Below, piece after piece: positions 27,924 to 58,099 of a stretch of DNA of 64,000 bases. The notes under the pieces were generated by a model that made no database searches, was not told the origin of the DNA, and saw nothing but the letters and a program-made list of their open reading frames with translations. Origin of the DNA: Podarcis erhardii (taxonomy: Eukaryota); the NCBI GenBank assembly GCA_964252035.1, contig OZ176213.1, one strand, 5' to 3'. A program made the translations under genes and the position numbers. Positions within the stretch are counted from its first letter, which is position 1. Every line of letters begins with the position of its first letter.

Positions 27924-31567
<3,644 letters not shown>

Positions 31568-32414
31568 TTGTTTGTGTCGAGCTGAGTAAGTAGAGACTCC
31601 TGCTGGAAGGAGTGTGCAATGGTCTTGTGGTAGAAAACCTGCGTGGAGTGATGCTCTCTCCTCGTTCAGAGGGCATCTGATTGAAGGGAAGCAGAAGATG
31701 GATGTCTTGGGGAGGACTTCATGCTCTTCATGCAAAGGCATCAGCCTCTGCTAGATAGAGAATCTTGGGTAGCATGGAGCAGCCCCCATTAAAACTTATT
31801 TGGGAGAGTGGATTCTTTGATTCATGATTTGCTTGGGAAGGCCTTGGAAGCTTGCTGCCTCTCCTACACTTGCTTGAGGACACAGCCCTCTATCTGTGTC
31901 CGTAATCCACCTTTCCATGTTCATGGAATAAGCAACATGCAGCTGTGGGAAGTTACTCTGGTGCTAAGGGAACATCATCCCCCTGTGGCGTTGTCACAGT
32001 TGAGGCTACTACAAGCTGGCCTAGCGCATTTTACCAAATGCAGAGGAGCACAGCAAAGGCCCCATTATGCCTAGGTAGCCGAGTGCCCCTAGACTAGAGC
32101 TTTTCCAGAAAAGGGAGCACTTTATTCTAAAATAAAATGCAAGGCAAATTGAAAGAAGAGTAAGTGAAGGTTGTTCCAGAGTGGAGAGGCAGCAGTAACT
32201 GGCATTGGAAGTTGAAAGGGTGACCAGGGGTGGAGGTAGAATGAGAGATTGAGTTTTAGCTCTATAACAACCTCTCTTTCCTTTATGATCAGTCAAAAGC
32301 ATGTCAAAAGGAAGCGGAACACCCTAGTTTATAAGGAAGTATTTCACTGTGTGTTACTTCTCAGTGATCTTTTTGAGTTTCTAAGCCATACATGTCTCCC
32401 TCTCCCATCCACAG

Positions 32415-32600
32415 GCAACTCTGTTCTGTCCTGAGGGCTAGGATGATGTCAGCAGGAAGAGGGGACCGTGTCATGGAAGCTCTGTGCTGTATTGAATCAC
32501 TATTACGCTCAGAGGAATAGTCCTGTTGGCTGCTGTATTTAAAGCTGTGTAATATATGTTGGCCTCCAAAATAAAAAGACTGATACTGACTCCTTTATTC
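32415..32600 (+). other. NDUFAB1: Probable non-coding terminal (3' UTR) exon of NDUFAB1
   Basis: Donor gtaagt at 31586 lies 18 nt after the stop; pyrimidine tract plus cag at 32414; AATAAA at 32570-32575. Confidence 0.5.
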
Positions 32601-33799
32601 TGATTTTCACTGGTTCCAAGCATGCGTGTATTATGTGTCTCAGGGTTAGGGTTACAGCTATATTTCCTGTTCTCTTCTGGTGTGGTCCTTCTCCCTACTT
32701 GCATCTGGGGAACTCATAGAATTGAAGAGTGGGAAGGGACTATGAGGGTCATCTAGTCCAACCCCCTGCAATGTCTTTTGCCCAATTGTGGGACTCGAAC
32801 CCATGACCCTGTGGTGAAGAGCCTCATGCTCTACTGACCAAACTATGTTAAAGGCACCTCTTGGCTGCTGAGCCAAGAGGTGGGAGGAGCTCTTGATCTC
32901 AGGTCAGACAAGGGGAACCTTTTTCAGGCTGAGGGCTGCATTCGAGGGGCCACTTGCCAGAGGCAAAGGTAGGTAGAGCCATGAATGTGAATTCTCCCTT
33001 TTGTACAGCAGGCTGATTTCTACACCCCCATCCTCCATCCAGACTTTGTGTCCAGAGTTCAAGGACACATTCCAGCCAGGCAGAAAAACTCAAGGAATGT
33101 GCTAAGCTGAGCTGGTGAGGGGTGAAACTATGGCTCAGGGAGGGTCCTGTGAGCCTTTGTCCCAGAGGTCTCCACACCCATCCCTGGCTTAGATGCTCTG
33201 CAAATGCCCTCTGGAGCCCCATGTGTTCTGTAGCCAGTTCCTGCCGATTCAAGAGCTTTGCCCTGTTGGGACTTGCTCTTCTGTTGTGTTTGGAGCAGGG
33301 GCGTGGGGGTTTTGTGGCCCACCAGGAAGCCTTCGCTCCTATCTGCCCCAGCCATGATGGCCAATGGCCAGGGATGGTGGGAGTTGTGGGCCAGCAACAG
33401 GCAGGACTACACCGCACCCTTCATTGAGCTAGCATGATGGGACATAGTGGTGGCCAACTGCTCAGCTACCAAGGCCTCTTGCTCCTGCACTGCCAAGTGG
33501 AGGCAACTTGATTTCCAAGCAAGGGAGAGGGGTTGGGGCAGGGACACTTTTCCACATGCTCCTCTGGACAACCACATAACAGTGATGGGCACACTAATGC
33601 CAGCAGAGCAACTAATGCTAATTTCTGTACGATAAGCTAGTTTCCCCACCTGCACCTTCTCCGCAAACAGAGGCATTGGAGAGTTCAAGGACACATTTTA
33701 GCCAAGGAGGAAGGAGCATGGGGAGGGGATGTGTGCTCCCTAGGGCCAGAGAGAGAAGCCTGGTGTGCCACATTTGGCCACAAGTGCCTGAACTGTCTC

Positions 33800-35110
33800 T
33801 CCTTGCAGCTGGCCTGCTCGACAGAGGCTCCGAGAGGGCCAGGGAGTCCCTGGGATTGAAGTCCCGAGCAGGGCGTCAGTCGAAGTCACCGAGCGCCTGC
33901 CCCGGAGAAGGCAACCAGGAGACCCCCTCGGTTGCTCTCGGCCCCACACGCCCCTCCCTCGAAGGGGAGGCGTGGGGAGTCAGGGCACTCTGCAGATGCC
34001 CAGAGAGCAACTTTTCCTCCCCACGTGCGCCGGCAAGCTCTGGGGCTGCTGCCTCGCTCGCCTCCTCCCGTCGTGCCACCGCGGACGTCCCGGAGTTGGG
34101 GGCAGGCGGGGACTTCCCGTCTCCAAGCCGGGGGGCTCCGCTTTCCGGGTCTGGGGCGGCGGCGGCTGCTGCTGCTGCTTCTCCGCCTCCTCCTTTTGTG
34201 CCAGCCGCGCGCTCGCTGGCTCGTGTCGCGCACGGGAGGTGGCGAGCAGGGCGGAGGGGGGGGGGGGGCTCCGCTTCCTGGCAGCGACGGCGGCGCGCTT
34301 CGGAGGGAGCCAGGCGCGCAGCATGGACCTCCACCGCCGCCGCCGCCGCTGCTGCTGCTGCTGCTGCCGCCTCCGCTGCTCTCTCGTGGCGCTCCTGGCC
34401 CTGCTGGCCGCCGCAGGTAAGGCGCGGGCGAGGGGGGCGCGGGGTGGGCTGGGCGCTCCGTCGGGCACCGCGGGGCACCGCGGGCTCCTCTCCTGCCCTC
34501 CTCTGTCTCTCTCCGCGCAGGGCGCTCCGGAGGCTGCGAGCAACGCCTGGACGCCTCGGCCGCCCCCGAGGGGCCCCCCTGCTCGGATCTCCTCCCCAGA
34601 CAGCGGCTCCCCGTCGAGGGGCAGGAGGCGGCGGCGGCGGCCCTGCCAGACCCGCTGCAGGTGGACTTCGAGGGGGTCGGCCGGGAAGGCGGGCGGCAGC
34701 GTCGGCGGCCCCGCGGGGACCAGCAAGGCGCCGGTAGGACCCCTCAGCCTGGCCTCGCCATCACCCCCTCCTCCGGTAAGGACCCCTTCCCTTTTTCTCC
34801 CTTCCCTCGAGAGGGCTCCAGAAGGTCGCCTGGCTGGCCATCGGTCTCGCTGTCCTTGGCATCGGGGAAGACCCCGCCCCGTCGGGTACTGTCTGCCGGG
34901 GGTGGACAAGGCTTAGGGCGCTCTCTGCACAAGCTCAGAGACCCGCTTCTCTCGGATGATGTTGTCAGCGCCCTCCAAAATCGGGCAACAGCCCTTCTTC
35001 GCTGGCTTAGGTGCTGGGCACCGCTGGGGCGGAAGGTCGCCCTCTGGGGGAGCCAAGTGGCCCCAGGCATGGGGCACCCCAAGAAGGCGTCTTGCTCGCC
35101 CAAGGACCAC
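33800..35110. promoter_or_regulatory. CpG island over the promoter and exons 1-2 of the mucin-like gene
   Basis: Very high GC and CpG density with GCG/GCT triplet runs. Confidence 0.75.
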
Positions 35111-38100
35111 CCCCCCACTCCCCCACTTGTTACCTGCCTGAAACTGCCAGCACCGGGTATCCCAAGTGTGTGGTGGAGATTTGGTAGGTCTGAACCTGGG
35201 GCTGGTGTGGGGAGGGTGAATTTGGGAGTCACTGGTGCTGCAGGGCGCCCCCACCCCAATTTTGATCACTGAAGTGGCTTTTCTGTGCCCACCCCCCAGA
35301 TGTGTCTGGACTCCATTTCCCATCATCATCCTTGACTTTTGGCTCTGCTGGTTTGGGGTGATGAGATCTCAGCATCATCTGGGAGCCACAGGGTAGCTCC
35401 CCACCCCCCTGCTTCATGGAAGATACACCTGGTCTTCCAACAGGGAACATTTTTGCGCACACACACCCCGTCATTAATAAATTACTGCTCATCATTTAGG
35501 AAGATTTACATGCCACACTTTTTTTTTTTTTAAACTAAACTGCTTACATACGTTCTGATGGCCATGTGCAGTACTGTAATTGTTTAATACATTCGAATGT
35601 TCATGGGGCCGAGAGGGCACCACAGGGGGTGCTGTAGCAACAGCAAAAAAACGGAAGGCAGAAAGTAGAAGGGGGTGCCAAATTTTAAAAAGAATATAAG
35701 AAAATAAAAAGAGCCTTCTGGATCAGGTCAGTGGCCCATCTAGTCCAGCATCCTGTTCTCATAGTGGCCTACCAGTGGGAAACACGTAGGCAGGACCCAA
35801 GCCCAAGAGTTCCCTTCCCTGCTCTGGTTTCCAGCAACTGGTATTCAGAAGCATAGCAGCCTCCAACTGTGGACAATGGAGTTCATAGCTTTAAAGCACC
35901 CGCAAGCACCATCCCCTTTAGATGGCCATGTGCATTTTTTCACTGGCTTCAAAATGTCCCACACTGCTCTTGCTGCATTTCGGGAAACCAGCTGCTCCTT
36001 CTGCTAAGCAGGGTGGGGTGGGGCCCGGACCTCTGCCCCCAAGCCTTACCCTGGCAGCACCCCCAAAGGATAATGCCTGGCTGTGAGGCCCCATGTTCTT
36101 CCTAATGTCTGCCATGTTCTGGAGGCTGGTTGTGGCTCCTTCGTGGGGCAGAAAGGAGCACTCTGCACATGGCTTTTCTTTCTCCCCCCTTGCTATCTTC
36201 CAGGAGGGGTCTGGTCTGCAGGGTGCTGCTCTGTCTACAGGTATCTGCACCTTTGCCGCCACCTGTCTCCTTGCTCGACTCCTATCTTCACTCCAGAAAG
36301 ACATCGTCTCACCTTATGGTGCTGCGAGGATGTATCTGTGTGGGTGTGCAGTTAGCTGCAGGCAGGTCTTTTGGGGTTGGTGCTGGCTTTGTGCCAGAGC
36401 TGGGTATCTTTCTTAGAGCTGCATTCCTAGACTGAGTAGAATGGAAATATTATGCAAGAGGGAAAAAGCAACAGAACCACAGTAGGAAGCAGCTGCCTCT
36501 GTGGGATCCCAGCAGAGCCGTTGGGGTTCCCATCCATGGCTAACCTTCCTTCACAATCCCTAGATTAAATATGTCCATCTCATGCTTGCCTACCAACCCC
36601 AACGAAAACCTCTTGCTAGTGACCCAAACTCTCCTTTACCTTTGCTTAGGGTTTTCGTCGATGGAGGAACCAAGCTCTCACCCTTGACACATGGTTGTGT
36701 TTAGAAGAAAGCAATGCCAGACAAATTCATAGCACACTTATGTGGTCAACAGGCATCTAGTTGCTAATCTCTAGGTTGAGATGGGAGGAGGGCAGCGTGT
36801 TGTGACTCTGTTCTTTTGGAAGAGTGCAGCTAGGCATGTACCTTCCCCTCTGTAAGACAAAGTGTGGGGAACATTTTTGAGCCTGGGGGCCTTACGAGCA
36901 ACCTTCTGGGGGCCACATGCCAGGTGTGGACAGAGTCGTGGGTCAAAGTGAGTGTGGCCAGAGGCAAAACAGCAGTTTCCACCGCCATTCTCCACTTTTC
37001 TACTTTCCAGCCACACAAAAGTCAGATATTTCTGCACAGCTCTTGTCTTCCATCCAGGCAAGCAAAGTGACATCATTACACTTCAAGGGCACTTGAGGAG
37101 ATGGCAAGGCAGGTGAGGGCCAGATAGTCATGGAGGGCCGTATTCTGCCCCCCGTCTTCAGGACAAGAGACGCAGGGCTGATACAATACCCCTCTTTGAT
37201 TGTTCAACCTTAGGTGGAGAGTAGGAGGGCAAAGGCTTCAAGGTTTCACTCAGCTCTTAATCAGCGAGGTCATGGGCAGCCTAGACTGGCCCGGTGGTCT
37301 GGCTGCCAACTTAATATACCGCAGGCTCTTACTGGCCTGGGCTTATCTCTCTCAGTCCATCTGTATGAGTGACATGCAGTGCTCTAAGGACAACCTGGCT
37401 GCTTGGGGGGGGGGGAGGAGGGAGGATTTTCCTTCCCCACTGGCAATCAGATGAGTAGTAGTCATTGTAAGCCTATCAGAGACTGATAACTATGGGGTGC
37501 ATGATGCTCTGCCTGAATCCAGATGTTCGCTATGATGGATGACATCGCAGCTGTGTGTGTGGATGCAGGAAAGAGTAGTGGCACTTATCCTACAGTTGCT
37601 GATGCACACCCTTCCTCATTCCCTGGGGTCTCTGCCTTCTGCTTTGCCCCCACCCGTCAAGTCCTGTGTCTCAGATGTGAGCGTATGAATGCAGAGGATC
37701 CAGGAGTTCCTCGTACAGAACATGGATTTCTTCCACAGCAGACACGATGCCAGCCTCCTCCTCCGAACCAGCCGTGTCAGATAGCGGTCTGTGCCAGAGA
37801 AAGCTTGTTGCCTTGGCAACACAGAGAGAGTGATGCAGAATATCTGGGTGGGTTGTCTTGAGTGCCTGTTCTGGATTATTAGCTGGGCTTCTGTCGAATA
37901 TTCTGCCACTGAGACGGCAGCTCTAGAGCCATTCTTACCCAATAGCTACGCTGTGGCCCCTGGGAGGCTGGGGGGAGATTTCTGCCCCACCCCATGTTTT
38001 TGCATAAGGTTTCGGTTCCCAAGTTTGTCTTGGGATTGAGAGCTGTGTAACTACGGTCCGGATGTGTGTGTGGTGTCCATGCGTGGTGCAGAAATCCGGT

Positions 38101-41100
38101 GAGAAGCAGGGCAGCTGCTCCACCCCCAAATCAGCAAAACCAGATCAAAAGTAAATCATTCATTCATTCTCCTTGTATGCTGCTTTTCCATGCTCAAAGC
38201 AGCTTACAACAAAGAAAAGAGGAGAGTATTTCAAAATCAAAGTGCAAAAATAATTTCCTAATAGCAACAAAACACCACAACAGTATAGAGAACACCAGAC
38301 AAAAACAAAACAAAACACTTCAGTGCTATAAATATAGCAAGGTTGCATAAACAACTACAGTGGTACCTCGGGTTAAGAACTTAATTCATTCCGGAGGTCC
38401 ATTCTTAACCTGAAACTGTTCTTAACCTGAAGCACCACTTTAGCTAATGGGGCCTCCTGCTGCTGCCGCGCCACCGGAGCACGATTTCTGTTCTTATCCT
38501 GAAGCAAAGTTCTTAACCCGAGGTACTATTTCTGGGTTAGCGGAGTCTGTAACCTGAAGCGTCTGTAACCCGAGGTACCACTGTACATCCAGCATCCAAT
38601 TGCAAAAATAACAAGGGAGCTTTACAGTTGCACCGAGAGAGCTCTGTGTTTAAATGCATTTTTGGAACAGGAGGTTTGGGGGCTTTGGCTTATTCACCCT
38701 CCCGGGGCTGCCAGCGTGTAGCATCAGCGCAACACCACTGCCTGGTACCTCCCGGTGCTTTAACCTCCTTGCGTCTGGTTGAACAATGGGCACTTGCTGA
38801 CATTTGCAGCTCAGATCCCGAAGACGCCTCTGCTTTTCTGCCTGTAGGGGTGGCAGTGAAGATGGTGCTACCCCTCGACTTCCCCCCAGGAAGCTCACTG
38901 CCTCTGCTTTCCCTCCACCCCACAGGGTCAGATTTCTCTGGGCTGCAGGACTCTCTACCTGTAGGGCAAAGCACCAGTAAGAAGCTGAAGACCCTCCTCC
39001 ATGGCAGTGCTGAGCCCTCTGGCATCACCTGGCATCTTCCCTCATCCACTGATGCTGCTGTCCCCACTGTGTCGCACCCAGACTTGCAGACTGGATCTGC
39101 TGTCCTTGATGCCAGCCAAGAAGAAACATCAAGGAGGCCAACGGAGGTGGAAGAAAGCAGAGCAGCAGTTGCCACTGGGAGAGCCACTCAGTTCCCCACT
39201 CAAGAGAGCACATTGGGGGTTGGTGGGCTGCCCCAACCAAGTCCACGCCTCATCACAACCAAGCCTGTGACCTTCTCAGCGTTGCTTCCTGGGCCCATTT
39301 CCCCAAAGGATGCTGCAGGTCAAAATTCTTGGCCCTCTTCTCTTTTGGAAGAAACCTCCAGCCCTGGAGCTGGAGAGGAAGCCCCTGAGGTCTGGCAGTC
39401 CACCAGCCCCTCTCTGCTTCTGGCCTCCAAAGTGCAAGCTGCCACACAGACCCAGGCTGAGCCTCAGCACCCTTGGCCGGAGAGCCAGGGACCCCCAAGT
39501 GCTACGACGGGTGGGAATGAGACACGCAGCGTGGGCCCTACAGATGACCTGAAGATGCCCACCAGAGCCAGCAGCCTGAGGCCCCAGGAGACCCAGTCAC
39601 CCACTGCAGAGACTCAGGAGACCCTTCTTCTGGCTTCCACTCCACAGCCAGTTGCGGCTGGTACTGGGGCAGCCCAGGAAGAGGATGTGGCAACCATCAC
39701 AACACAAATATTGCCACAGGGCTGGAGCACAGCCCCGTCTGTGGTGGGTGCTGAGGGGCCAGGGGGCAGCACACCAGGCGTGGAGCCAGAAACCCGATCT
39801 CACGAGTCTTGGGGTGCCATGGGACCCTCTGATCCTGGCCCCACCCTGGCTCCACCCCCAACACCGCCGAGATCCAGGGCAGGGTTGGGTCACACGATGG
39901 AGACAACCCAGGGAGCCATAAGCGCAGGCAATTTTGTCCCCAGTGGAACAGCCCTGGTGCACAATTTCACAGAAGCCATGAGGGCAGCACAGCCTGTAGT
40001 GGATGCTCAGGCTACTTCTGCAGAATCCCCACATCGTACAGAGGTGGCTCCCCACTCATCCTCATCTTTCCACTTGGGGACAGCTTTGCCCCTGAGGTTG
40101 GCAGACTCTGCCACCCATCCTGCTTCTGCCAGCAACCTCCCTACTGGGTCCACATTGCTCACCTTGTCTGTGGGCCCGGGTGGTGTCATGGAAGAACCAA
40201 GAGCTTCCAGAGCAGGTGGGCATACCAGCACAGACGTGCCCATGTTTCAGAACGCCACAGACCCGCTCATGGCTGCGGAGATTGCCTCCAGCGGGGCTTC
40301 CACAGCCACAGAAGAGCCTGAATCTCAGAGCCCCTCGGAGCCTGGCAGTGCCTGGCCCACGAAAGGGGGCGATCCTGAACAGCCATCCTCACAGCCAAAG
40401 CAGCTTAATCCCAAGGGGGCTGCAGAAGAGGGCACCTTGCCCACCATGGTCCCCACTCCAATGGAGGTCTCTGTCAATTACAGAGAAAGAACAGGGGTGC
40501 CTAGTGATGCCAGGGAGGGCCCTCATAAAGCCACAACACTCCCCACCCAGCAGGCAACAAGAGAGGGGTCCCTTTGGCAAGCCACAGAGGCAGCAGAGCC
40601 CTTCACCAGCATCAGCAGCCTCCCAGGAAAGGATGCCCCCACTGGCTGGACTTTCAGCCCAACCAAAACCCCAGCGGGCTCTGAGGCTGCCTTGCTCACT
40701 ACAGAGGGAGATGATGTGAGCACAGCTCCTTCGTTGAATCCAGAGCTTCACTCCCAAGCAGCCAATTCCTCCAGTTTGGGCTCTGGAACGGCTGTGCCCA
40801 CAAGCAAGATAGGAGCCACTGGGACCATGCCTGTGACCCACCGGCTGTGGACCTCTCCAGGCAGGACAAGGAGCTGGGAATGGGGGAAGAGGCCCAGCGC
40901 CACAGCCGAAGGTGGCTCTATCAGGGAGATTGCCCGTTCTCCATTTAGTCTGGAGGGTCTTGTCCGAACAACAGCCACTCCAACAGGGAGCAGTGGGCAC
41001 ACACAGCCGCCTATGCCAGCTCCAGGACCAAAGAGCACTGCAAGGGAGGAACCTGTCGTTGCCAGCACCCGGCTCTCGCCAGCCACACCAGAGAAGTCCA

Positions 41101-44100
41101 CAACGCAACTGGAGCCGGCCGTGCCCAGGGAAGGCCGCCCCAGAGCCCACCAGGTCTTTGTGGCAGAGAATCAGCTGCCCCGCCTGAAAGGTCAGTGGGG
41201 CACCTCTCTCTGCAAACCAAGGGAGGGAAGCAGAGCTGATCTGGGGGGCAAGGTTGGCAAGCTAGGAGGGGGTACTGTGGCAGGTGAGTTCCTTGTAAAC
41301 CGAGGTTTAGTGGGGACTGGAAAGGACTGTCTGCGAAGGCGGTGGACTCTCATTCATTGGAGGTTTCTAAGCAGAGGTTGGTTGGCCATTTGACGGGGAT
41401 TTCCCCCTCTCTGATTCCTGCATTGCAGGGGCCTGGACTAGGTGGCCCCTGGGGTCCCTTCCTACTCCACCTTTCTATGATTCTGTAGTGCTTGTTGGGT
41501 AAGGCTGAAGGCAGAGAGGTCACAAATAGCTGGAGTTAACTGTTTCTAGTTTCAACCCTTTCCTCTTCCCTGATGAGTTTTACAGAAGTGGGGAGGAGGA
41601 AGAGGACAGCCAGGGCTGCCCTCTGGATTGGTTGTTAAGTTAAAAGGCAGAAGGTAGTGGCTGGCAGAGGATTTTCCTGGGAAAATCCAGGCGTACGGCA
41701 GCTGTACCCATTTGCCCTAATGGACCAGCCATCCTCAGGTAGAATTTAACACACAGGAGGCCCCACCACCTTGCTGGAACTAAGCTGGTCTGGGTCTGAA
41801 TGTAAAAACATAAGATGACTTCCTGGTCAGGCCAAACGGGACCCCACCTAGCACCGTGTTCTGACAATGGCTGACCCAGTGCCCATTGTGGGAAACCCAC
41901 AAGCATGGGCATAACATGAAAACAAAACCTGTAAAAAATACTCAGTTTCTACACCCATTCTCCTGGTCCAGCTACAGCTGTGGCCATTGGCCTCTTTGAA
42001 GCAAGTTTTCTGTTGCAGAGACTCCTGGCTCTCCTTTTTAATGCTATAAGCCTGCAGCCTCTGTGCTCCCTACACTTGTGGGGCAGGTGGATCCACTCTC
42101 ACCATCCTGCCATGCTGTGGCAGCTGACATCACTTGGGGCCCTGAAGGTGGTAATCGAATTGTAGACTCATACGTACAAAGCAGGAATTACTACTAAAGA
42201 ATCTCTTCTCTCTTCTCTCTTTCTCTTTCTCTGTCCCTCCTTCCCTCACCCCCAACCTTGGGCTGAGGTGGGTCCTATTTTCCTTCTCCTCCCTTCCTGC
42301 AGCCACTCTCCTGCATATCCCTTGTGAGCTGGTCCTGGCCATGGAGTTTTCCAGAAGCTTCTGGAACCCTGACTCACTCGAGTACCAGGGCCTGGTGCTC
42401 AGCGTCAACGAAACGGTGGGTTAGCCGTGTTTGTTTACCCAGGACTTGGGTGGGATTTTATCTGGGTTGCCCAAGGTCCTAGAGCCTAAAGGCCACATTC
42501 CCTGCTGGTCAACCTTCCCAGGGCCACATGGCCATGGGGGCGAGGCGGGACTAGGGGCAAAAGTTGGCAGGGCTGCAAATGCAAATCTGGCCTTTGAACA
42601 CTCGGCTAGTTTCTATGCACCCTTCCCTCTCATCTTCATCCAGGCAAGCAAGAGACATGATTAGAGTACAAGGAAATCATTCCACTCGGGCAGAAGCACT
42701 CAAGGAGGGCGTGAAGCATGGGCCAATGAGGGGTGTGGCCTGGGGAAATGGGTGGGGCCTGATGATAGTTCCAAGGGCCAGGTGAAGAGGACTGGAGGGC
42801 CACATTTCATCTCCAGGCCTGAGGTTCTCCAGCCCCTCCTAGAGTTTATTATTTTGAACTGGTGATGTTTCATTGTTTTAATGCCTGAGGGATTTAAAAA
42901 AATAAACCGTGTCTGTTTTGTTGCAGGTGTTATAATTTAATTGTATTTAATGCATGATTTATTTCATGTTAGCAAACCCCCCTGGGATCTGTTTTGGTGA
43001 AGGGTTGGGATGGAAGCTCCATAAATCAATGACTAATTGATTACCCTTCCTTCCCCTTCCCCCTTTCTCTCTCTAAGGTCACACCTCTCTTCGATTCCCT
43101 GCCGGGATTTCAGCGACTGGAAGTGAAGGCAATCCGGTATCTATCCATCCATCCATCCATCCATCCATCCATCCATCCATCCATCTCTCTCTTTGGGTTT
43201 TCTTGTCTGCCGTATCCCAGGGCTTAGGGAGGGCAAGATAACTGACACCATTGTGTAGCAGGTGAAAATGCAAAAGTTGAAAATTGTCCTGGGTGGCTCC
43301 TTGGAAAGCAGATGACATCAGGAAGGCCTTGATGACTCTGAGGAATCTCTGAGGGTGCAGGAGGTGGGCAGGGAAGAAGGCAACTTACTGGCTAGCTCCA
43401 TCTGATGGCAGAGTTGGATCACCAGGAGAGGCTGGTTGCAGGAAGGCCTTTAAAAACGTGCGGAACTCAAGCAATTTCCTAAAGTATTTGGTGCATTCAT
43501 GAGTCACATTTCCAAACCTGTCCCTGCAAAATAATTTCGCTTATGGGTGATGACTAGACCCTGAAACTTCCTGTGTTAGGAATGGTAGTACAGTGGTACC
43601 TCGGGTTAAGTACTTAATTCGTTCCAGAGGTCCATACTTAACCTGAAACTATTCTCAACCTGAAGCACCACTTTAGCTAATGGGGCCTCCTGCTGCCGCC
43701 GCACCGCTGGAGCACAATTTCTGTTCTCATCCTGAAGCAAAGTTCTTAACCCAAGCTACTATTTCTGGGTTAGCGGAGTCTGTAACCTGAAGTGCATGTA
43801 ACCTGAGGTGCCACTGTGTGTGTGTGTGTGTGTGATCTCAGGACTCAGATGGGGCTGCCTCTGCAGCCACCTTCTGTGTATTACATGGGACTAGATGGTC
43901 CTTGGAATACCCTTCCACCTCTGCAATTCTACCATTCTCTTATTCTCTCTGCAGGCCCGGGAGTGTGGTGGTAGCATTTGATGCCCTCTTCCTGGTAGCG
44001 GCTCCCGGCTTGTGGGCTGCTCTGAATCGCTCATCCCTCTCGGAGCGCTTGCGGCCGGGGCTCTGGGTTGGCAATGCCCGGGTGCTGCAGAGCACGACAC

Positions 44101-47100
44101 TGGGTAAGCTTTCGCTGACGGGCAATTTGCCCATTTCCCAAACCCAGCCGACATCAGTTGCCCAGGAGATGCCGCTGGGGACAGAACCTGCACACCTGCA
44201 AAGCAGCGGCTCTCCCACTGAGCAATGGCTCCCTCCCCACAAGTTTCTAGTCCTCAAGATTTTAAACCAAGTGGCTGCTTTCCATAGACACATCAGAAGC
44301 TAGCTGCCTTTTACCAGTGGTCCCACCTAGCTCTATGCTGACTGGCAGTGTCTTTCCAGGGTTCTCGGGCGGAGTCTCTCCCAGCCCTACCTGGTGACAA
44401 AACTTGGAGCCTTCTGCATGCCAAGCAGGGGCTCTGCCACTGAGCTGTTACCTGTTCCTACAGAGCGGCACCTGGACCTCTGCTCCGTTCTCTTCGCCTG
44501 CCAAGCTGGCTACGAGTGCGTCTCCACCGGAGAAGACGGGAGTGCCATCTGCACCTCCGCTTGCCACCGCGACTACTGCAAAAACGAGGGCATCTGCACC
44601 CATGCCGTCAACCACACGCCTGTCTGCCAGTGAGTGTCACAGCGCACAGGCCTTGCGCTCAGTCCCTCTGCTCCTGCACACACGTCTCTGCCTTCAAGGC
44701 CTCTGTCTGATGGTTTCCCCCTTGCATTCCCCAGGTGTCCCGTGGGCAGTGACTTCTGGTTCCTGGGGGTGCGCTGCGATTACAAGGTGACCCAGCAGGG
44801 CTTGCTGGGGGTTGCCTGTGGCCTCTTGCTGAGTCTGGTGGTGGTTGGAGCTGCCATTGCCGGCCTGGTGATCCGCCGGGTTCGTATGCTGCTGCTGGAG
44901 GCCAGAGCGGATCAGACCAAGAGCAGGTGAGACCCTGCCCCTTCTCCTCCCTTCCTGAACTCCACGTAGGTGGAAGGAAGAGAGAGAAACTGGGGCACTG
45001 CTCCCATTGGTTTCCTGCCTTCCCTGCCAGTTTAATCCATGCACTGCCTTGACAGTGGCACTGACTACCTTGAACAGGGCTGGTTTAAGCATGGAGCTAA
45101 ATAAGCATCAAGGGAAGGGGTTTAGGGTTAGACATTTTCCATAGCTGGATTTTTGACAATAAACGGTCACAAATTGCTCAGCTGAGCATTCGTTTTCTCA
45201 GTTCAAGTACAGTGGATCCTTGGGTTATGTTACCTTCGGATAACGTAACTGTTTGGGTTGTGAACGCAGCAAACCTGGACGTGTATACTTCCGGGTTTCG
45301 TCACATGCGCAGAAGCGCTCTATCGCGCCACGTGCGTGCGCAGAAGCAGCGCCTCATGTTGCGGACTTTTCGGGGTACATACAGACCGCCAGAATGAATT
45401 AGGTTCCTATCCAGAGGGTCCACTTATTAAAAATCCCAAAAGAGCAACTGTGCAACAAGGCAGGCTTGATGTCTTATCTCTACTAAGTACAGAAGTGGAC
45501 GCGTTAAGGTAAGATTAGTTTTGAGGATCCGATCCATGCAATTAAAAAAAGTAGGAGAAAACTTTTCAACTATGAAGTATACAAAGATAAACATTATTTT
45601 CCATCCTTATTGTAGGTTTTCTTTCATTTCAATAAATAAAATTTTATTTTATGGTTTGTTATTGTTTATATTTTGAATTGAATTTTGTATTTTGAATCGA
45701 ATATATATATATAGGGGCACCCAAATCTTGTTAAGTGGTTAGGGCATCTAAAGACCTTAATCTGGCCCTGACCTTGGAAGGACTTTCCTTCATCAAAGGT
45801 TTTTAAGCAGAGGTTGGGTGGCCACCTGTCCAGGCTTCTTTAGCTGTGATTCCTGCATTGCAGGGGGTTGGGCTAGATGACCCTTAGAGGCCCCTTCCAG
45901 CTCTGCAATTCTATGATGTCTTCCCCCCTATTCATGACATTCCTCATTAACCTCTTCTCTTAGAAAGGGCACCCACAGGGGCGGTTTGCAGTGCTGAGTC
46001 TCTGCTGCTTCCCTTTTTCTGGGCCTTGTTGGGCTCACAGGACTGTCCACTTATTGCTCTTTCCTTATTATTATTTATTAGATTAGTATACCACCCTTCA
46101 CCCATAGATCTCAGGGCTCTTGTCTTTTTCCATCTAGTGTGGGGCTGTGGGTGGGTGGGAAATGGGACGGGGGCTGCTAGGCTGAGCTGAGGGGTCTATT
46201 TCCTCCCGCCAGGTCTGCTTTCAAGGGAAAAGCAAACAGCCAGCAGCTTCTGGCTGAACTCCAAGGGAAATCCGGGGGTGGGGTGTGAAGGGGTAGAGAG
46301 TGTGTAACTGAGCTTTGTGTTGAGAGAGAGACAGGGCAGTGGCGTAGCGTGGGGGTGCAGGGGGGGCCGGCCGCACTGGACGCAACATCTGGGGGTTAGG
46401 GCTAGGGGGCGCAAATCCACGGGTTAGGGGGCGCAAATCCACAGGTTAGGGGGCGCAAATTACTTGCCTTGCCCCGGGTGCTGACAACCCACGCTACGCC
46501 ACTGAGACAGGGGGGTGGATTCGTTTCAGCCTGAGCTCTTTAGCACTCCAGGCTTGAATCACTGGCTACAGGCTCTGAGCATATGCAGAGTGTAATCCCC
46601 TTTCTAGGCTCTGAGCATATGCAGAGTACAGTCCCCTCTCTATGCTCTGAGCATATGCAGAGTGCAATCTCACTCCTAGAATGAAAAGATTGGGCAGAAG
46701 GTCTCACTGTGGGCATCTTGCCTAACCCCCATAAACATCCTCTCACCCACTTTGACCTGCAGAACTGGCACTGTTACAGGTGTCACATAATACCTGTTCC
46801 ACATTTGTAAGAAATAGATATTTTAGTGTGGCGGCACCTACGGTCTGGAACTCCCAGACTCTTGACATCAGGCAGGGACCTTCATTGTACAGTGGTACCT
46901 TGGGTTAAGTACTTAATTCGTTCCGGAGGTCTGTTCTTAACCTGAAACTGTTCTGAACCTGAGGTACCACTTTAGCTAATGGGGCCTCCCGCTGCTGCAG
47001 CGCCACCAGAACACAATTTCTGTTCTTATCCTGAAGCAAAGTTCTTAACCTGAGGTAATATTTCTGGGTTAGTGGCGTCTGTAACCTGAAGCGTACGTAA

Positions 47101-50100
47101 CCTGAGGTACCACTGTACTCTTTTCTGTGCCTGCTGTTAGAGGCATTTTTGTTTAGACAACCCTGCTCAGGCTTTTAGAATGATGGTGTGTATATTGGCC
47201 ATTTTAATTTTCATGAATGTTTTAATTTCTTTTACTAATAATTTCTTTTTCTAAACTGCTATGAGGTTTCCTACCATCCACCAGCATATAATTTTTAATT
47301 ACCAAGGACTTCCCAACAACATGCTACTTCAGCATGTTTTGTTTTTGCTTTTTTAAATAATTGTATTTACAGTATGAGGATTTTAGATTAATTTCTATTA
47401 CATGGGGGGTTGGACTAGATGACCCTCGGGGATCCCAACTCTACGATTCTATGACTCATAGCAACATAAGGGATCATAAACTCTTGACCCCTCCAGCTAC
47501 CGCCGCTTCTGCCGCCTTGACGATGTCTCGGCCCACTACTGGTCGGAGCCTTGGCTGGCCTCAGCAGTCTCCTTGGACAACCCGGCCTTCAGCAACTCGG
47601 AAGAACTGCTGCACTTGCAGATCCTGGACACAGCCTGCTGCAGCTGCCAGGACGACTGCATGGGCCCCGACGGCTACTGCAAGCAGCCGCAGGATGCCCC
47701 CTGCATCGGGGCCGCAGGCCGGCCGAGGTAACCGTCACTGCAGCCATGGTGGGTGGTGTAAAGGGTGGTGCATGAAGGGTTCTGGTGAAAAGGGGGGTCA
47801 AGGACTGCAGCTGTAATGGCACAAGGGCATACAGTGTTTAGTTTCAAGTTTCTAAGTGATGGGACACCTGCTTGGCATGCAGAACATCCCAGGGTTAATC
47901 CCCAGCGGCATCTGCAGGTAGGGCTGGGAGAGACCGCACACACCTTTCTTCTGGATGCTCCTCACCTTCGTGCAAAGATGGGGGTGGGTGGGGGACTCAG
48001 TTGCAACAGGAAAATAAAGATGTGCTTTGCTTTGACTGGTTCCTACCTCCATCCATTCTTCTCTGACCGATAATGGACTCTGAATCCCTTGATGGAGAGT
48101 TGGGCTGTAAAAGCAAACGCCCATTTTTTAAATATACCAGCTTGAAACCCCAAAGAGCCGCTCTCAAGTCAGTGAAGGAGACTGTAGGTGGGCCAGCGGT
48201 CTGACCAGATCAAGACAACTTCCTCTGTGTTTGGCAATTGTAAATTCATCCTCCTGTTTTTTAAAAGATGAGCTGCATAAACAACCTTCATTTGCCCTCT
48301 GTACATATAGACTAACACATGCAAAGGACTTCCATTGCTTAGCGACTTCCCACCCCCCAGCAAGCAAATCATGCTTGATCCCCAGCAGCAGGCAACAGCC
48401 CAGCAGGGTGGAGAGCAGGCTGGGCAGGGAGGTGGGAACTCCCCAAGGAAAGGACAGGCTGAGCCCAGAGGACTGACCTTCAATTGTCACAGCTAACCTC
48501 CTGGCTGGCCTGAGGCCAAGCAGCTGGCATAAACTTTCCACTTATGCTGGTTTGTTTGGTGCTAAAGGGAAAAAACTTCCCCAAACATAAAGGCCTCTAA
48601 TAGTGCCATGGAAAGAGGAACTCAGGAAAAGTTTGATAACTGGTAGCAGAAATGCAGAGATAAGCCCCCACACTGCTAGACTGCAGCCTTGTGCTCCAAT
48701 TTCTTGGCTGCTTTTCCCAAGGCAGCATCTGGCTTTCAGCTTCCTCCCTTCAGCTTGCTCTCCCCAGCCCCTCCTCCTCCAACCTCAAATCTTGGAATGC
48801 AAGCATTGATCTAACCATGGATCTTCCTTCTGCTGGGTGGGGGTAGATGCTTGGTGGGGAGATAGGGCTCAAGAGGGGAAACTAGGAGAAGAGGTTTTAA
48901 CCATTCAGGGTCAAAGTCACATGCCCAACTATCTCATCGATTAGAGTTGGGTCAGATGCCTGAATCCCAATATTTTATTACTGCTAAGTGGAGAAGGGTT
49001 TAAAGATAAGCCCAGCTGCTGGATGAGGCCAAAGGGGTGCCACCAGGGGCCCATCCCTTCCAGCATCCTGTTCTCACAGTGGCCAACCAGATGCCCCAAT
49101 GGGAAATCCATTAAGCAGGACCCCAGCACAAGAGCCCCCTCCCCTCTTGTGGCTTCCAGCAACTGGTATTCATTATTCAGAAGCAGACCACCTCAAATAT
49201 CCTTCCTGAGAATGCATCATAGCAGTAGCTCCTTATCAACAGAGAGACACTGGGCTGCATCCAATAGTTGCAGCACAACTACTTGTGCTACTTCCCCTTT
49301 TCCAAAAGCTCTGGTGAACCCTGGAGTGGGTGGAAAGCCAGTGGAAGAACCGCATTGGCATTTGACAAAATCTACAACTCTTTCTCCCTGAACCACCACC
49401 GTACTTGTTCCTGGTGCGCTTTAAATCACTTTTAAGTAGGATGTGGCAAAATGCTGGCCTTACTTTCATTCCTCGGGGAAAGTCATGGGCTTCCAAGGAA
49501 GAGAGTTGGGTGTTCCACATTTTAATGTGTGTTTCCTTGCATCTAATGCCCCAGTACAGTCTAGCATGTGTAGATAAGGCTTCCTCCCATTTTGCATCTT
49601 GGACATCTTCCTTCCAATCTTTTTAGTGCTCATTACAACCATTGGGATGTGAGCTCCAACAGCATGAACGACCCTATGATAGACTCCGGGAAGGCCAGTG
49701 AAGTCTCCGTCTCCAGCTGGCCCATGGAACCTATTCAGTGGAGCCCTTGCCCTGCTCTGCACAACCCCTCCAGGGAGCAAGTGGTGAGTGAGGCCCAGGG
49801 CAGGGGGAAAGCAGGTACACTTCCCTGGGCTGTGGGTCTCTAGTTTGGAGAGGTGGCGCTTTGGCATGGAAGCGCACAGGGTAGTTTGGCACAGAACTCT
49901 GATGAAACACAACTATTCGTTTCCATATTGCAAAACAAACAAACAAAAACCCTTATTTGCATGTTATGATGAATCTCCAAGGGGGCCAGAGGGTATAAGA
50001 TATAAATTTGCTCATGTAACTTGATTATGGTGGAGACTACGAGAAGAGACTTTTGCTCAAGGTCACTCCATCAGTTTGGCAACAACCAGTAAGTTGTCTG

Positions 50101-50641
50101 GCTGCTCACCCATAAAGCAATAGTCCTACATTGTGGCATCTGCTCATTGGCCCTAGAAAACGAAAACGGGCCTTCTCTGCAGTGGCTCCCCATCTCTGGA
50201 ATGCTTGTCTGGTGCCTTCATTATACACCTTTAGGCGCCAGGCGAAAACGTTCCTTTTTAACCAGGCCTTTGATCTGATTTACATCCTATGCCCTTTTAA
50301 AATGTGCTGGTTGTTTTTTGGGGGGGGCTATTGGGTTGTTGTTTTTATTTTAATTATGTATTTTGTGGTTTTATATCTTTATTTTATTCTGTGAAACACC
50401 CTGAGACCCCTCCCCAAAGTGTAAAGTGGTATATAAATTCAATAAATAATATTAGAAATCAGCAGGAAGGGGAGAGAGGGGTTGGGCCCTTTCAGCCAAA
50501 TTTGCCCCCTGCGGCATTCCCAGTACAAAACAATCCCTGGAGCCCCACTGTCTCTCCTTTCCGCAGCACAAAGCCCAGAGGCCTCACTCTTACTGCGAGG
50601 GAATGGAGCTGGTCAACCTGGAGAGAAGCTGGACAGCCTGA
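34323..50641 (+). CDS. Unnamed type-I transmembrane mucin-like protein (signal peptide, S/T/P domain, SEA, Cys-rich/EGF, TM, cytoplasmic tail), about 1277 aa; MUC3/MUC17/IMPG2-like architecture
   Basis: Exons 34323-34416, 34521-34775 (alternative donor 34733), 38848-41190, 42303-42415, 43078-43136, 43955-44103, 44464-44629, 44735-44926, 47497-47727, 49627-49783, 50567-50641. All GT-AG, phases compatible, 3834 nt open. SEA ([13 protein letters not shown]...RPGSVVV), 10-Cys module ending [42 protein letters not shown]. Confidence 0.85.
38358..38583. mobile_element. 226-bp Tc1/pogo-type MITE
   Basis: TA-CAGTGGTACCTCGGGTTA...TAACCCGAGGTACCACTG-TA. Confidence 0.92.
38848..41190 (+). CDS. 2343-nt mucin-domain exon (Ser/Thr/Pro-rich, non-tandem) of the unnamed gene
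   Basis: Inside ORF 38628-41393; acceptor cctgtag, donor AAAG|gtcagt, phase 1 to 1. Confidence 0.85.
43143..43185. repeat. (ATCC)n microsatellite directly after a splice donor
   Basis: Directly visible. Confidence 0.92.
43591..43816. mobile_element. 226-bp Tc1/pogo-type MITE (same subfamily as 38358-38583)
   Basis: Same TIRs and body; right flank runs into (TG)n. Confidence 0.9.
45190..45378. mobile_element. Truncated Tc1/pogo-type MITE
   Basis: TA-CAGTGGATCCTTGGGTTA left end; body resembles 7435-7585; right TIR missing. Confidence 0.55.
46337..46504. mobile_element. hAT MITE with 17-bp TIR and 8-bp TSD
   Basis: TIR CAGTGGCGTAGCGTGGG / CCCACGCTACGCCACTG; TSD AGACAGGG at 46329-46336 and 46505-46512. 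Confidence 0.92.
46571..46678. repeat. 3 x 36-bp minisatellite
   Basis: Units start at 46571, 46607 and 46643 with the invariant core GCTCTGAGCATATGCAGAGT. Confidence 0.88.
46890..47115. mobile_element. 226-bp Tc1/pogo-type MITE (same subfamily)
   Basis: TA-CAGTGGTACCT...AGGTACCACTG-TA. Confidence 0.9.
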
Positions 50642-51339
50642 ATCCTTCCAGTCAGACACAGGACGTGTCAACGTGCTCGAAACCAACCTTTTAATTTCTA
50701 CCTGACCAGCTCAGAGATTGAGGTGGCTTTGAACCCTGCGAACAGTGCAAGCCCATCAAGGCAGGTGGCTGATGTCAGTTTTCAATGCAAAGGCTTGAGG
50801 AGGCTCAACCATCAAGTAAACTAGCCTTACTGGTTTCGTGTTGGATTTTTTATTTTTATTTTTACGAGTAGTTACTCTTGGGAGGAACAGCACAGCACTG
50901 GAATCCAACACTGGGACAAGACTGAGCAGTTAGTTCCTATTTGGACGCAGGAGTTAGTTCCTATTTGGAGACAGGAATCTCCTTGACAGAAAAAGCTGGA
51001 CAAGTAACTGGATTAAAGGGCGAGGAGGAAGAGCAGTTACTGTTTCGTTTTGTGCAAGTTGCTGTAATGGAGGTATTAAACGCCAGAGTTTAAAAAACCA
51101 AACCAAAACCCAGCATTTTTTCCCCACATGCTCCTCAATTTCTAAGTGTCCTGTCAAGATGGGAGCTGGCCCTAAAAGGAAACACACAAATACTAAACCC
51201 TTGTTAACCTAGCATAATCTAGCAAATCTGCCTGTGCACCAATAGCAGAGGGTCCAGGGGGAAGAGAGGAGACACACGGACAAACAATACAAATCACGAA
51301 TGAGACCGTTCCATGGTAAGCAGCCAAAAAATGTCATGA

Positions 51340-51345
51340 TTTATT
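51340..51345 (-). terminator. Candidate TNRC6A polyadenylation signal
   Basis: AATAAA on the minus strand, about 1.8 kb past the stop, at the end of an AU-rich UTR-like tract. Confidence 0.45.

Positions 51346-58068: not shown

Positions 58069-58099
<31 letters not shown>

What the first reader, a model, noticed from the sequence alone, without database searches (positions are those of the whole stretch)
34323..50641. Unnamed 11-exon transmembrane mucin/proteoglycan-like gene that I cannot match to a named human gene
A full frame-consistent model can be built: signal peptide; about 780-aa S/T/P domain; one SEA; a 10-Cys module whose last part ([14 protein letters not shown]...[16 protein letters not shown]) resembles the juxtamembrane EGF of IMPG2 and MUC3/17; a TM helix; and a tail of about 170 aa (seen). 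The tail does not resemble those of IMPG2, MUC1/3/12/13/17 or HEG1 as I remember them. It has a CpG-island promoter. It may be a SEA-EGF receptor family retained in non-mammalian vertebrates (inference).
Basis: partly seen in the sequence, partly recalled or inferred. Interest (0 to 1): 0.74.

Follow-up and report, generated by a model that had tools for sequence, protein, structure and literature searches.

The report
Lizard orthologue of zebrafish vap gene
This is a real, intact 11-exon gene for a mucin-like membrane protein; it is the lizard copy of a little-studied vertebrate gene that zebrafish databases call vap (vascular associated protein), and it is found from lamprey to birds and platypus but not in marsupials or placentals.

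Summary
Window 34323-50641 (+) holds 11 exons with canonical GT-AG sites. They form one open frame of 1251 codons behind a CpG island. The product has a signal peptide, a non-repetitive Ser/Thr/Pro-rich region of about 840 aa, one SEA domain with a canonical G|SVVV self-cleavage motif, a 10-Cys module (a 4-Cys partial EGF plus a full EGF), one TM helix and a 171-aa tail.

The gene is not nameless. It belongs to a single-copy orthologue group that runs from lamprey and sharks to birds and platypus. Its teleost members are labelled 'Vascular associated protein', 'vap' or 'si:ch211-14k19.8'. One zebrafish paper exists (Kawahara, Endo and Dawid 2012); I could not read it. Sauropsid copies carry junk automatic names such as NACA-like, 'IMPG2 partial' and collagen-like.

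The nearest paralogue is the C-terminal SEA-EGF-EGF-TM part of IMPG2 (hhalign 99.5%, 27% identity). The tail is unrelated to IMPG2. It is very conserved and mostly disordered, with short motifs LDNPAF, DSGKAS and a C-terminal WTA.

No therian representative appeared in an exhaustive profile search. The 'unnamed' claim does not hold. This is an ordinary orthologue of a poorly studied gene.

The parts
33750..35000 (+). CpG-island promoter region that spans exons 1-2
   Evidence: GC 0.69-0.79 and CpG o/e 0.71-0.85 in 500-nt windows, against o/e 0.10-0.26 outside. The transcription start was not determined.
34323..34416 (+). Exon 1: start codon and signal peptide (basic Arg/Cys-repeat n-region, then a Leu/Ala-rich core); ends in phase 1
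   Evidence: Translation and GT donor; matches the N-terminus of P0001/P0002. The signal peptide is judged by eye only.
34521..34775 (+). Exon 2: Pro/Gly/Ala-rich start of the ectodomain, with 2 Cys
   Evidence: AG/GT sites and frame; 92% identical to P0001.
38926..41190 (+). Exon 3: 754-codon non-repetitive Ser/Thr/Pro-rich (mucin-like) region. An in-frame alternative acceptor lies at 38890.
   Evidence: S+T 24%, P 12%, no Cys, 4 N-glycosylation sequons; no tandem repeats; 89% identical to P0001; acceptor choice follows P0001.
42303..44103 (+). Exons 4-6 (42303-42415, 43078-43136, 43955-44103): SEA domain
   Evidence: AlphaFold2 model with pLDDT 92.7 and beta-alpha-beta-beta-alpha-beta order; best structural matches are MUC16, TMPRSS6, TMPRSS11 and GPR126 SEA domains, Z 8-12; Pfam SEA 21 bits, E 3.7e-4, below the 26.4-bit cut-off.
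43959..43973 (+). G|SVVV motif, the putative SEA self-cleavage site (cut between 43961 and 43962), at the start of exon 6
   Evidence: Translation. In the model the Gly is residue 68, and the MUC1 SEA alpha chain 1041-1097 (ending, as I recall, at the cleaved Gly 1097) aligns to model 12-68 at rmsd 1.4 A. The motif is kept in amniotes, salamander, sharks and lamprey. Cleavage itself was not tested.
44464..44798 (+). Exon 7 and the first part of exon 8 (intron at 44630-44734): 10-Cys module, a 4-Cys partial EGF plus a complete 6-Cys EGF next to the membrane
   Evidence: Ten Cys invariant in 46 orthologues; aligns with IMPG2 EGF1-EGF2 but lacks the fifth and sixth Cys of EGF1; Notch1 EGF12 matches model 146-189 at Z 6.0, rmsd 1.3 A; Pfam EGF 17-19 bits, below the 21.5-bit cut-off.
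44799..44873 (+). Transmembrane helix (25 hydrophobic residues), followed by basic residues
   Evidence: Translation; predicted helix with pLDDT 89-98 that continues into the juxtamembrane segment.
44874..50641 (+). Cytoplasmic tail, 171 aa: end of exon 8 (44874-44926), exons 9 (47497-47727), 10 (49627-49783) and 11 (50567-50641, with the stop)
   Evidence: Splice sites and frame; mostly disordered in the model (pLDDT below 50 after about residue 97); blocks conserved from sharks to birds.
47573..47590 (+). LDNPAF motif (NPxF/Y type; candidate PTB-adaptor or endocytosis signal)
   Evidence: Coordinates; S, D and N invariant and P nearly invariant in 23 species. The function is inferred from resemblance to the FxNPxY signal of LDLR (my own knowledge).
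49682..49699 (+). DSGKAS motif (fits the DSGxxS phosphodegron pattern)
   Evidence: Coordinates; D, S, G, K and the final S invariant from sharks to birds. The degron reading is inference only.
50621..50638 (+). Conserved C-terminus ...ERSWTA-COOH
   Evidence: Coordinates; W and T invariant and A nearly invariant across vertebrates. Function unknown.

Best explanation
The locus is the lacertid-lizard orthologue of the vertebrate gene that zebrafish resources call si:ch211-14k19.8 or vap (vascular associated protein). It encodes a type I membrane glycoprotein. The parts are a signal peptide, a long non-repetitive and probably O-glycosylated Ser/Thr/Pro stalk, a SEA domain, a 4-Cys partial EGF plus a full EGF, one TM helix, and a 171-aa, mostly disordered tail that carries very conserved short motifs.

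Shown here: the exon structure, the orthology, the SEA and EGF folds (by prediction), the position of the G|SVVV motif, and the conservation of the tail.

Inferred: the SEA domain probably cuts itself at G|SVVV during folding, as the MUC1 SEA domain does. The mucin-like outer subunit would then stay non-covalently attached to the EGF-TM-tail subunit and could be released by force or shedding. The tail motifs (LDNPAF, DSGKAS, C-terminal WTA) would recruit cytoplasmic partners for endocytosis, turnover or signalling.

From the title of the zebrafish paper and a zebrafish blood-vasculature gene set, the likely site of action is endothelium and blood cells, so it would be a vascular sialomucin-like surface receptor. 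No intact copy was found in therian mammals.
For: 1. Gene model: 11 exons, all GT-AG, one frame of 1251 codons. NCBI models of the same shape exist in Podarcis lilfordi and Lacerta agilis.
2. Orthologue group: 261 word-search hits and 94 profile hits at E below 1e-30. These span the whole SEA-to-C-terminus profile in sauropsids, platypus, amphibians, lungfish, coelacanth, sharks and ray-finned fish.
3. The gene tree follows the species tree, with one copy per lineage. The clade, lamprey included, is separate from IMPG2 (SH-aLRT 97 and 99).
4. Names: 'Vascular associated protein' (Electrophorus, Triplophysa, Astyanax), 'vap' (Gasterosteus, Cetorhinus) and 'si:ch211-14k19.8' (Danio rerio P0291 and many others). 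Lizard against Danio: 43% identity, E 3e-84, aligned to the last residue.
5. Transcript evidence in zebrafish: the full 1196-aa ORF lies on a 4-kb contig assembled from a public sequencing run.
6. Fold: pLDDT 92.7; SEA matches at Z 10-12; the MUC1 alpha chain ends on the motif's Gly.
7. Tail conservation and disorder.
8. [quoted passage not shown]
9. Synteny: the tail-to-tail neighbour of the TNRC6 family is shared by lizard and platypus.
Against: The link between the 2012 'Vap' paper and si:ch211-14k19.8 rests on database names given to the same orthologues. The paper is not in the library, so I could not compare its cDNA or read its domain description. To my recollection its phenotypes come from morpholino knock-down, which is often unreliable. 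One transcriptome paper finds si:ch211-14k19.8 enriched in iridophores, so expression is not only vascular. There are no expression data for any reptile. Pfam scores for SEA (21 against 26.4 bits) and EGF (17-19 against 21.5 bits) are below the curated cut-offs, so those domain calls rest on the predicted structure and on profile comparison. The G|SVVV motif is lost in frogs, lungfish and ray-finned fish including zebrafish, so cleavage cannot be essential to the family's core function. The motif readings (PTB signal, degron) are pattern matches only. Absence from therians is shown only for the best 150 of 679 cluster representatives.
Confidence: 0.87

Rival explanations
1. This is a family with no characterised member. 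On this view the 'vap' and 'Vascular associated protein' labels on the fish orthologues are a database mix-up, and the gene studied in 2012 is a different one.
For: I could not read the 2012 paper. The Danio rerio entry I saw is labelled 'uncharacterized protein si:ch211-14k19.8', not vap. Most orthologues carry junk names.
Against: Two naming pipelines agree. UniProt gives 'Vascular associated protein' in three fish species. NCBI gives 'vap' in stickleback and basking shark. Both are attached to the same 90%-identity clusters that also carry 'si:ch211-14k19.8'. si:ch211-14k19.8 also sits in a blood-vasculature gene set, which fits the name.
Confidence: 0.07
2. It is IMPG2, or a recent IMPG2 duplicate, as many bird genome annotations label it.
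For: Dozens of bird orthologues are named 'IMPG2 protein, partial'. The SEA-EGF-TM part is homologous to the C-terminal part of IMPG2 (hhalign 99.5%, E 5e-23).
Against: Identity to IMPG2 is only 27%, and the match is limited to profile positions 16-220. The tail does not match. IMPG2 forms its own clade (SH-aLRT 99), apart from the Vap clade (97). One species, Aldrovandia affinis, has both an IMPG2 (P0239) and a Vap orthologue (P0329). The lizard protein shows no second, N-terminal SEA domain, and its first EGF lacks two Cys.
Confidence: 0.02
3. It is an orthologue of an epithelial transmembrane mucin of the MUC3/12/17 or MUC13 type.
For: Automatic names such as 'mucin-17', 'mucin-12-like' and 'mucin-3A' appear on fish, shark and frog orthologues. 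It has a SEA plus a juxtamembrane EGF plus a TM helix.
Against: There are no tandem repeats in the S/T/P exon. No EGF precedes the SEA domain. The tail is conserved across vertebrates as its own family, and platypus is the only mammal found with it. The locus lies between an NDUFAB1-like gene and a TNRC6-family gene, not in a mucin cluster. I had no reference MUC3/12/13/17 sequences to compare directly.
Confidence: 0.02
4. It is an inactive locus or a prediction artefact in this lizard: a pseudogene, or exons that are never joined.
For: There are no transcript data for this species. The S/T/P exon evolves fast (89% identity to the sister species against 100% in the C-terminal exons).
Against: The 1251-codon frame is intact, all splice sites are canonical, there is a CpG island, and every invariant residue of the family is kept. 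Fast change in mucin-like regions is usual.
Confidence: 0.02

Closest known systems
Zebrafish si:ch211-14k19.8 / vap (vascular associated protein; Kawahara, Endo and Dawid, Biochem Biophys Res Commun 2012, PMID 22510405)
   Same: One-to-one orthologue. It has the same order of parts. The C-terminal 352 aa are 43% identical and align to the final WTA residue. All ten Cys, the SSYRRF, DNPxF and DSGKAS blocks and the C-terminus are shared.
   Different: The zebrafish SEA region has lost the G|SVVV motif, and its N-terminal half has diverged (profile match starts at about position 44). The S/T/P regions cannot be aligned. The function reported in fish (erythropoiesis, angiogenesis) is untested in any amniote.
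IMPG2 (interphotoreceptor matrix proteoglycan 2, SPACRCAN), C-terminal SEA2-EGF-EGF-TM part
   Same: Homologous cassette (hhalign 99.5%, E 5e-23, 169 columns). Both have a G|S[IV]VV motif, and both have a juxtamembrane EGF in which the CxC pair is followed by a V-G-x-[DN]-[FW]-W-[FY]-x-G-x-x-C stretch.
   Different: IMPG2 has a second, N-terminal SEA domain and two complete six-Cys EGFs. Its tail does not match, and it forms a separate clade. IMPG2 is a retinal matrix proteoglycan that therians have kept.
SEA-type transmembrane mucins (MUC1, MUC3/12/17, MUC13, MUC16)
   Same: Type I topology, with a glycosylated stalk and a SEA domain near the membrane. The SEA fold matches MUC16 (Z 11.9), and the MUC1 alpha chain ends exactly on the motif's Gly. 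It probably works like them: a self-cleaved two-subunit surface glycoprotein.
   Different: It has no tandem-repeat array. S+T content is only 24%. The tail is a different, conserved one. It lies in a different genomic neighbourhood. It is not a member of those orthologue groups as far as tested.
Vascular sialomucins (CD34, podocalyxin, endomucin): functional analogy only
   Same: Single-pass, heavily Ser/Thr/Pro-rich surface proteins of endothelium and blood cells, each with a conserved short tail motif at the C-terminus (my own knowledge).
   Different: They share no sequence or domain relationship. Those proteins lack SEA and EGF modules.

Membership tests
Vap / si:ch211-14k19.8 orthologue group | Match from the SEA domain to the very C-terminus, with the conserved tail blocks | tested here: met
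   Profile positions 1-384 are matched by sauropsid, platypus, amphibian, shark and fish proteins. Danio alignment: E 3e-84 to the last residue. Tail blocks are invariant.
Vap / si:ch211-14k19.8 orthologue group | Monophyly with the named fish genes, and a gene tree that follows the species tree | tested here: met
   (71 rows; quick tree only, the careful search did not finish). Vap clade SH-aLRT 97, separate from IMPG2 at 99.
Vap / si:ch211-14k19.8 orthologue group | Conserved gene neighbourhood | tested here: inconclusive
   The tail-to-tail TNRC6-family neighbour is shared by lizard and platypus. The only zebrafish locus returned was a 4-kb transcript contig, and the two bird proteins tried (P0034, P0012) were not on record, so fish and bird synteny was not tested.
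Vap / si:ch211-14k19.8 orthologue group | Identity with the gene studied in the 2012 Vap paper | not testable with these tools
   The paper is not held. The link rests on database names.
SEA domain (Pfam PF01390) | Pfam score above the gathering cut-off | tested here: not met
   21 bits (E 3.7e-4) against a cut-off of 26.4 for P0001. Single exons give nothing.
SEA domain (Pfam PF01390) | beta-alpha-beta-beta-alpha-beta fold that matches solved SEA domains | tested here: met
   pLDDT 92.7. MUC16 SEA Z 11.9 / 2.9 A / 105 residues; TMPRSS6 Z 10.7; TMPRSS11 SEA Z 10.2; these stand clear of unrelated rows at Z 7 or less. Foldseek probability 1.00.
SEA domain (Pfam PF01390) | G|S[VI]VV self-cleavage motif in the turn between strands 2 and 3 | tested here: met
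   GSVVV is at model residues 68-72, between strands 57-66 and 71-79. The MUC1 and GPR110 cleaved N-terminal chains align to model 12-68.
SEA domain (Pfam PF01390) | Actual autoproteolysis | not testable with these tools
   Needs expression and a gel or mass-spectrometry assay.
EGF-like domain | Six-Cys pattern and EGF fold | tested here: met
   The last six Cys are invariant. Notch1 EGF12 matches at Z 6.0, rmsd 1.3 A, 39 residues. The weak PDB sequence matches are to EGF itself. Pfam EGF, at 17-19 bits, is below its 21.5-bit cut-off.
IMPG2 | Two SEA domains, two complete EGFs and an IMPG2-type tail; placement in the IMPG2 clade | tested here: not met
   One SEA only. The first EGF lacks two Cys. 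The IMPG2 match ends at the TM helix. Separate clades.
MUC3/12/17-type transmembrane mucin | Tandem-repeat PTS array, and an EGF before as well as after the SEA domain | tested here: not met
   No tandem repeats in 34000-51000 apart from intronic microsatellites. The region before the SEA domain has no Cys. No direct comparison with verified MUC3/12/17 sequences was made.
Mucin-like (PTS) domain in general | High Ser/Thr/Pro content that allows dense O-glycosylation | tested here: inconclusive
   S+T 24%, P 12%, evenly spread. This is lower than in classical mucins. Glycosylation was not tested.

The most novel reading that the evidence does not exclude
Vap would be an ancient, single-copy vertebrate receptor built from a self-cleaving SEA domain plus EGF. 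It would be sister to the C-terminal cassette of IMPG2. It would act at the surface of endothelium and blood cells as a force- or shedding-sensitive sialomucin. Its disordered tail would signal through an LDLR-like NPxF motif, a DSGxxS degron and a C-terminal WTA. The gene would have been lost, or changed beyond recognition, in the therian stem after the split from monotremes. As far as I could find, none of this (domain make-up, tail motifs, therian loss) has been described.
Probability: 0.3. Interest if true: 0.5.

Novelty: already known. Interest (0 to 1): 0.27.

Why it matters
For this window it settles the annotation. The locus is an ordinary, intact orthologue of a gene that exists in public annotations, not a new family.

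The wider value is in tidying the record. Hundreds of orthologues are filed under misleading names: NACA-like, 'IMPG2 partial', collagen alpha-1(I)-like, mucin-2/5AC/17/19, FLO11, CSPG5 and MEP1B. One group name (vap) and one domain description would replace them: a SEA domain with G|SVVV, a partial EGF plus a full EGF, a TM helix, and a conserved motif-bearing tail.

The apparent loss in marsupials and placentals, with retention in platypus, may explain why the gene has had almost no study. It also makes the gene a candidate for work on vascular and blood development in fish, frogs and birds.

Tried and rejected
- Pfam on the single exons by reference found nothing useful. The domains showed only on the full-length orthologue, and below the cut-offs.
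- The spliced product of the window itself was never joined and handed to a search. Exons were searched by reference, and the stored orthologue P0001 served as proxy. P0001 is identical to the window in exons 4-11 except for one residue.
- ESM Atlas search with the tail: no usable hit.
- PDB sequence search with the profile: only weak SEA and EGF matches, E 0.06-1.
- The 2012 Vap paper could not be opened by PMC id or PubMed id. Citing papers list it only in their references. A search for vap with endothelial terms gave an unrelated paper.
- The look-up of encoding contigs had no record for two bird proteins. For zebrafish it gave only a transcript contig. Synteny beyond lizard and platypus was therefore not tested.
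- Pfam gave nothing for the two large upstream ORFs at 7785-9476 and 10256-11164. PALB2 was confirmed from its last WD40 exon instead.
- The careful tree did not finish, so the quick tree was used.
- IMPG2, MUC3/12/17 and pseudogene readings were considered and rejected (see rivals).
- One fish-like protein, P0364, also carries a ferret label in nr. I read that as a mislabel or contamination, not as a therian orthologue.
- I met no contig that I took for human, and I made no search of human sequence.

Full report
**Observation.** The window has no N and looks like a squamate genome. A word search with the large open exon (38553-41390, by reference) returned two full-length NCBI models. These are P0001 from Podarcis lilfordi (1249 aa, 89% identity) and P0002 from Lacerta agilis (1239 aa, 83%). 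Both are misnamed 'nascent polypeptide-associated complex subunit alpha, muscle-specific form-like'.

Mapping P0001 back onto the window and reading the junctions gives 11 exons: 34323-34416, 34521-34775, 38926-41190, 42303-42415, 43078-43136, 43955-44103, 44464-44629, 44735-44926, 47497-47727, 49627-49783 and 50567-50641. All introns are GT-AG and the phases agree. The sum is 3756 nt, or 1251 codons plus stop.

Exons 4-11 are identical to P0001 except for one Ile/Val. The window therefore comes from a lacertid close to Podarcis. A CpG island covers about 33750-35000. Exons went in by reference, and P0001 served as the stored proxy.

**Anatomy.**
- Exon 1 encodes a signal peptide. Its n-region is an Arg/Cys triplet-repeat stretch that differs in length among lacertids.
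- Exons 2-3 encode about 840 aa rich in Ser, Thr, Pro, Ala and Gly. In exon 3, S+T is 24% and P is 12%; there is no Cys and no tandem repeat.
- Exons 4-6 encode a SEA domain. Pfam sees it only below its cut-off (21 against 26.4 bits). An AlphaFold2 model built on 46 orthologues is confident (pLDDT 92.7).
- The best structural matches of that model are solved SEA domains: MUC16 Z 11.9, TMPRSS6 10.7, TMPRSS11 10.2 and GPR126 8.3. Unrelated folds score Z 7 or less.
- The sequence GSVVV opens exon 6 (43959-43973). It lies in the turn between strands 2 and 3. The N-terminal chains of cleaved MUC1 (1041-1097) and GPR110 SEA domains align to model residues 12-68, and so end on this Gly. This is the canonical SEA self-cleavage geometry. 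Cleavage itself is inferred.
- Exons 7-8 encode ten invariant Cys. Compared with IMPG2, the first EGF lacks its fifth and sixth Cys and the second EGF is complete.
- The TM helix is at 44799-44873. The tail has 171 aa.

**Relatives.** A region search with P0001 residues 865-1249 found 261 proteins. The 120 shown are lizards, turtles, crocodilians and birds, at 59-83% identity over the whole region. Their names are a mixture: 'IMPG2 protein, partial', collagen alpha-1(I)-like, mucin-19-like, CSPG5, MUC17 and MEP1B.

A profile of 13 sauropsid C-termini (A1) was then scored against 1.84 billion cluster representatives. It gave 679 hits, 94 of them below 1e-30. Cluster look-ups show full-length matches, tail included, in these groups:
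- coelacanth, lungfish, paddlefish, bichir and gar;
- teleosts and sharks;
- salamander, caecilian and frogs;
- platypus (P0130, 1764 aa).

A shorter lamprey relative (P0191) also matched.

The gene tree follows the species tree with one copy per lineage. Platypus is sister to sauropsids, on a long branch (quick tree). All the short fragments among the best 150 hits are closest to birds, crocodilians, lizards, sharks, teleosts or a caecilian, and none to platypus. No marsupial or placental representative was seen. Those proteomes are abundant in the library, so an intact therian orthologue with this tail is unlikely. Only the best 150 of 679 rows were visible, however, so a strongly diverged remnant is not excluded.

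**Name.** In Electrophorus, one 90% cluster holds both 'uncharacterized protein si:ch211-14k19.8' (NCBI) and 'Vascular associated protein' (UniProt). Triplophysa and Astyanax orthologues are also 'Vascular associated protein'. Gasterosteus and Cetorhinus orthologues are 'uncharacterized protein vap'. The Danio rerio protein P0291 is 'si:ch211-14k19.8 isoform X1'.

P0291 aligns to the lizard C-terminus at 43% identity, E 3e-84, down to the last residue. Its full ORF lies on a 4-kb contig assembled from a public sequencing run, which is consistent with a spliced transcript.

[quoted passage not shown] I could see that paper only as a reference. si:ch211-14k19.8 is listed in a zebrafish blood-vasculature gene set. 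It also appears as an iridophore-enriched transcript. I found no other literature.

**Relation to known families.** After the orthologues, the next hits are IMPG2 proteins. They match only profile positions 16-220, which are SEA, EGF and TM, at E about 1e-17. Profile-profile comparison with the IMPG2 SEA2-EGF-EGF region gives 99.5% probability, E 5e-23 and 27% identity.

In a tree of this cassette, the Vap clade with lamprey (SH-aLRT 97) is separate from the IMPG2 clade (99). It is also separate from amphioxus 'mucin-17-like' proteins and from some unnamed groups. One fish, Aldrovandia affinis, has both genes. Vap is therefore a paralogue of the C-terminal cassette of IMPG2, not IMPG2 itself.

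**Tail.** From sharks to birds the tail keeps four blocks:
- QT.SSYRRF just after the membrane;
- [LM]DN[PL][AG][FY], which resembles the LDLR FxNPxY signal;
- DSGKAS, followed by S.WP.EP..W.PFP;
- [10 protein letters not shown]...E[RK][ST]WTA at the C-terminus.

The model predicts a helix through the TM and juxtamembrane part. Apart from one short helix, the rest is disordered, with pLDDT below 50 after about residue 97. This is the signature of a tail that works through short linear motifs. Which partners bind is inference.

**Cleavage motif across species.** G-S-[VT]-[VIL]-[VLI] is kept in amniotes (including platypus), salamander, sharks and lamprey. It is lost in frogs, lungfish, bichir, gar and teleosts. 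Self-cleavage is thus probably ancestral, and probably active in this lizard. It is not required for whatever the zebrafish protein does.

**Neighbourhood.**
- The last WD40 exon of PALB2 lies at 24935-25216 (+) (PF16756, E 1e-31).
- An acyl-carrier (PP-binding, NDUFAB1-like) gene lies at about 29.2-30.0 kb (+).
- The vap gene follows.
- A TNRC6-family gene then lies on the minus strand (PF16608 at 55346-56993).

The tail-to-tail arrangement of vap and TNRC6 is the same in platypus.

**Verdict.** The locus is the lizard orthologue of a named but barely studied vertebrate gene, so it is already known as a gene. The domain description, the tail motifs and the apparent therian loss are modest additions and would need the checks listed under next steps.

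Noticed in passing
window 34335-34370: The signal-peptide n-region is encoded by (CGC)n(TGC)n triplet repeats. The window reads five Arg then six Cys. Podarcis lilfordi and Lacerta agilis have shorter and differently arranged runs. This looks like repeat-length variation inside a signal peptide.
   Followed up: partly
window 38890 vs 38926: Exon 3 has two in-frame AG acceptors 36 nt apart. The upstream one would add 12 residues. The NCBI models in sister species use the downstream one.
   Followed up: partly
window 43139-43185: An (ATCC)n microsatellite of about 12 copies starts right after the exon 5 donor.
   Followed up: no
window 24935-25216 (+) and about 29242-29976 (+): The last WD40 exon of PALB2 (PF16756, E 1e-31) and, downstream, exons of an acyl-carrier-protein (PP-binding, NDUFAB1-like) gene. 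The local order is PALB2, NDUFAB1-like, vap. A GC-rich stretch at about 27700-28350 may be the promoter of the acyl-carrier gene.
   Followed up: partly
window about 53100-60500 (-): A TNRC6-family (GW182) gene lies tail-to-tail with vap. The TNRC6-PABC binding domain is at 55346-55825 and 56691-56993 (E 3e-26), and a Gln-rich exon is at 60063-60491. The window stretch about 51330-57000, from the non-coding part beyond the vap stop into the 3' exons of TNRC6, is colinear with the platypus locus L001 (about 28560-37400).
   Followed up: partly
window 50116-50391 and 6331-6567: Open frames with the 'RAFS.VAP.LWN ... FR...K..LF.QAF' signature typical of a squamate interspersed repeat. One copy lies in the last intron of vap.
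   Followed up: no
protein P0364: A percomorph-like Vap orthologue is labelled Oreochromis niloticus in one source and Mustela putorius furo in nr. This is probably contamination or mislabelling and should not be read as a therian orthologue.
   Followed up: no
protein P0130 / locus L001 (platypus): The platypus orthologue sits on a long branch (0.75 against a median of 0.12). Part of its tail has diverged, while SSYRRF, DSGKAS and the C-terminal ERSWTA are kept. This may mean relaxed constraint in the mammalian stem.
   Followed up: partly
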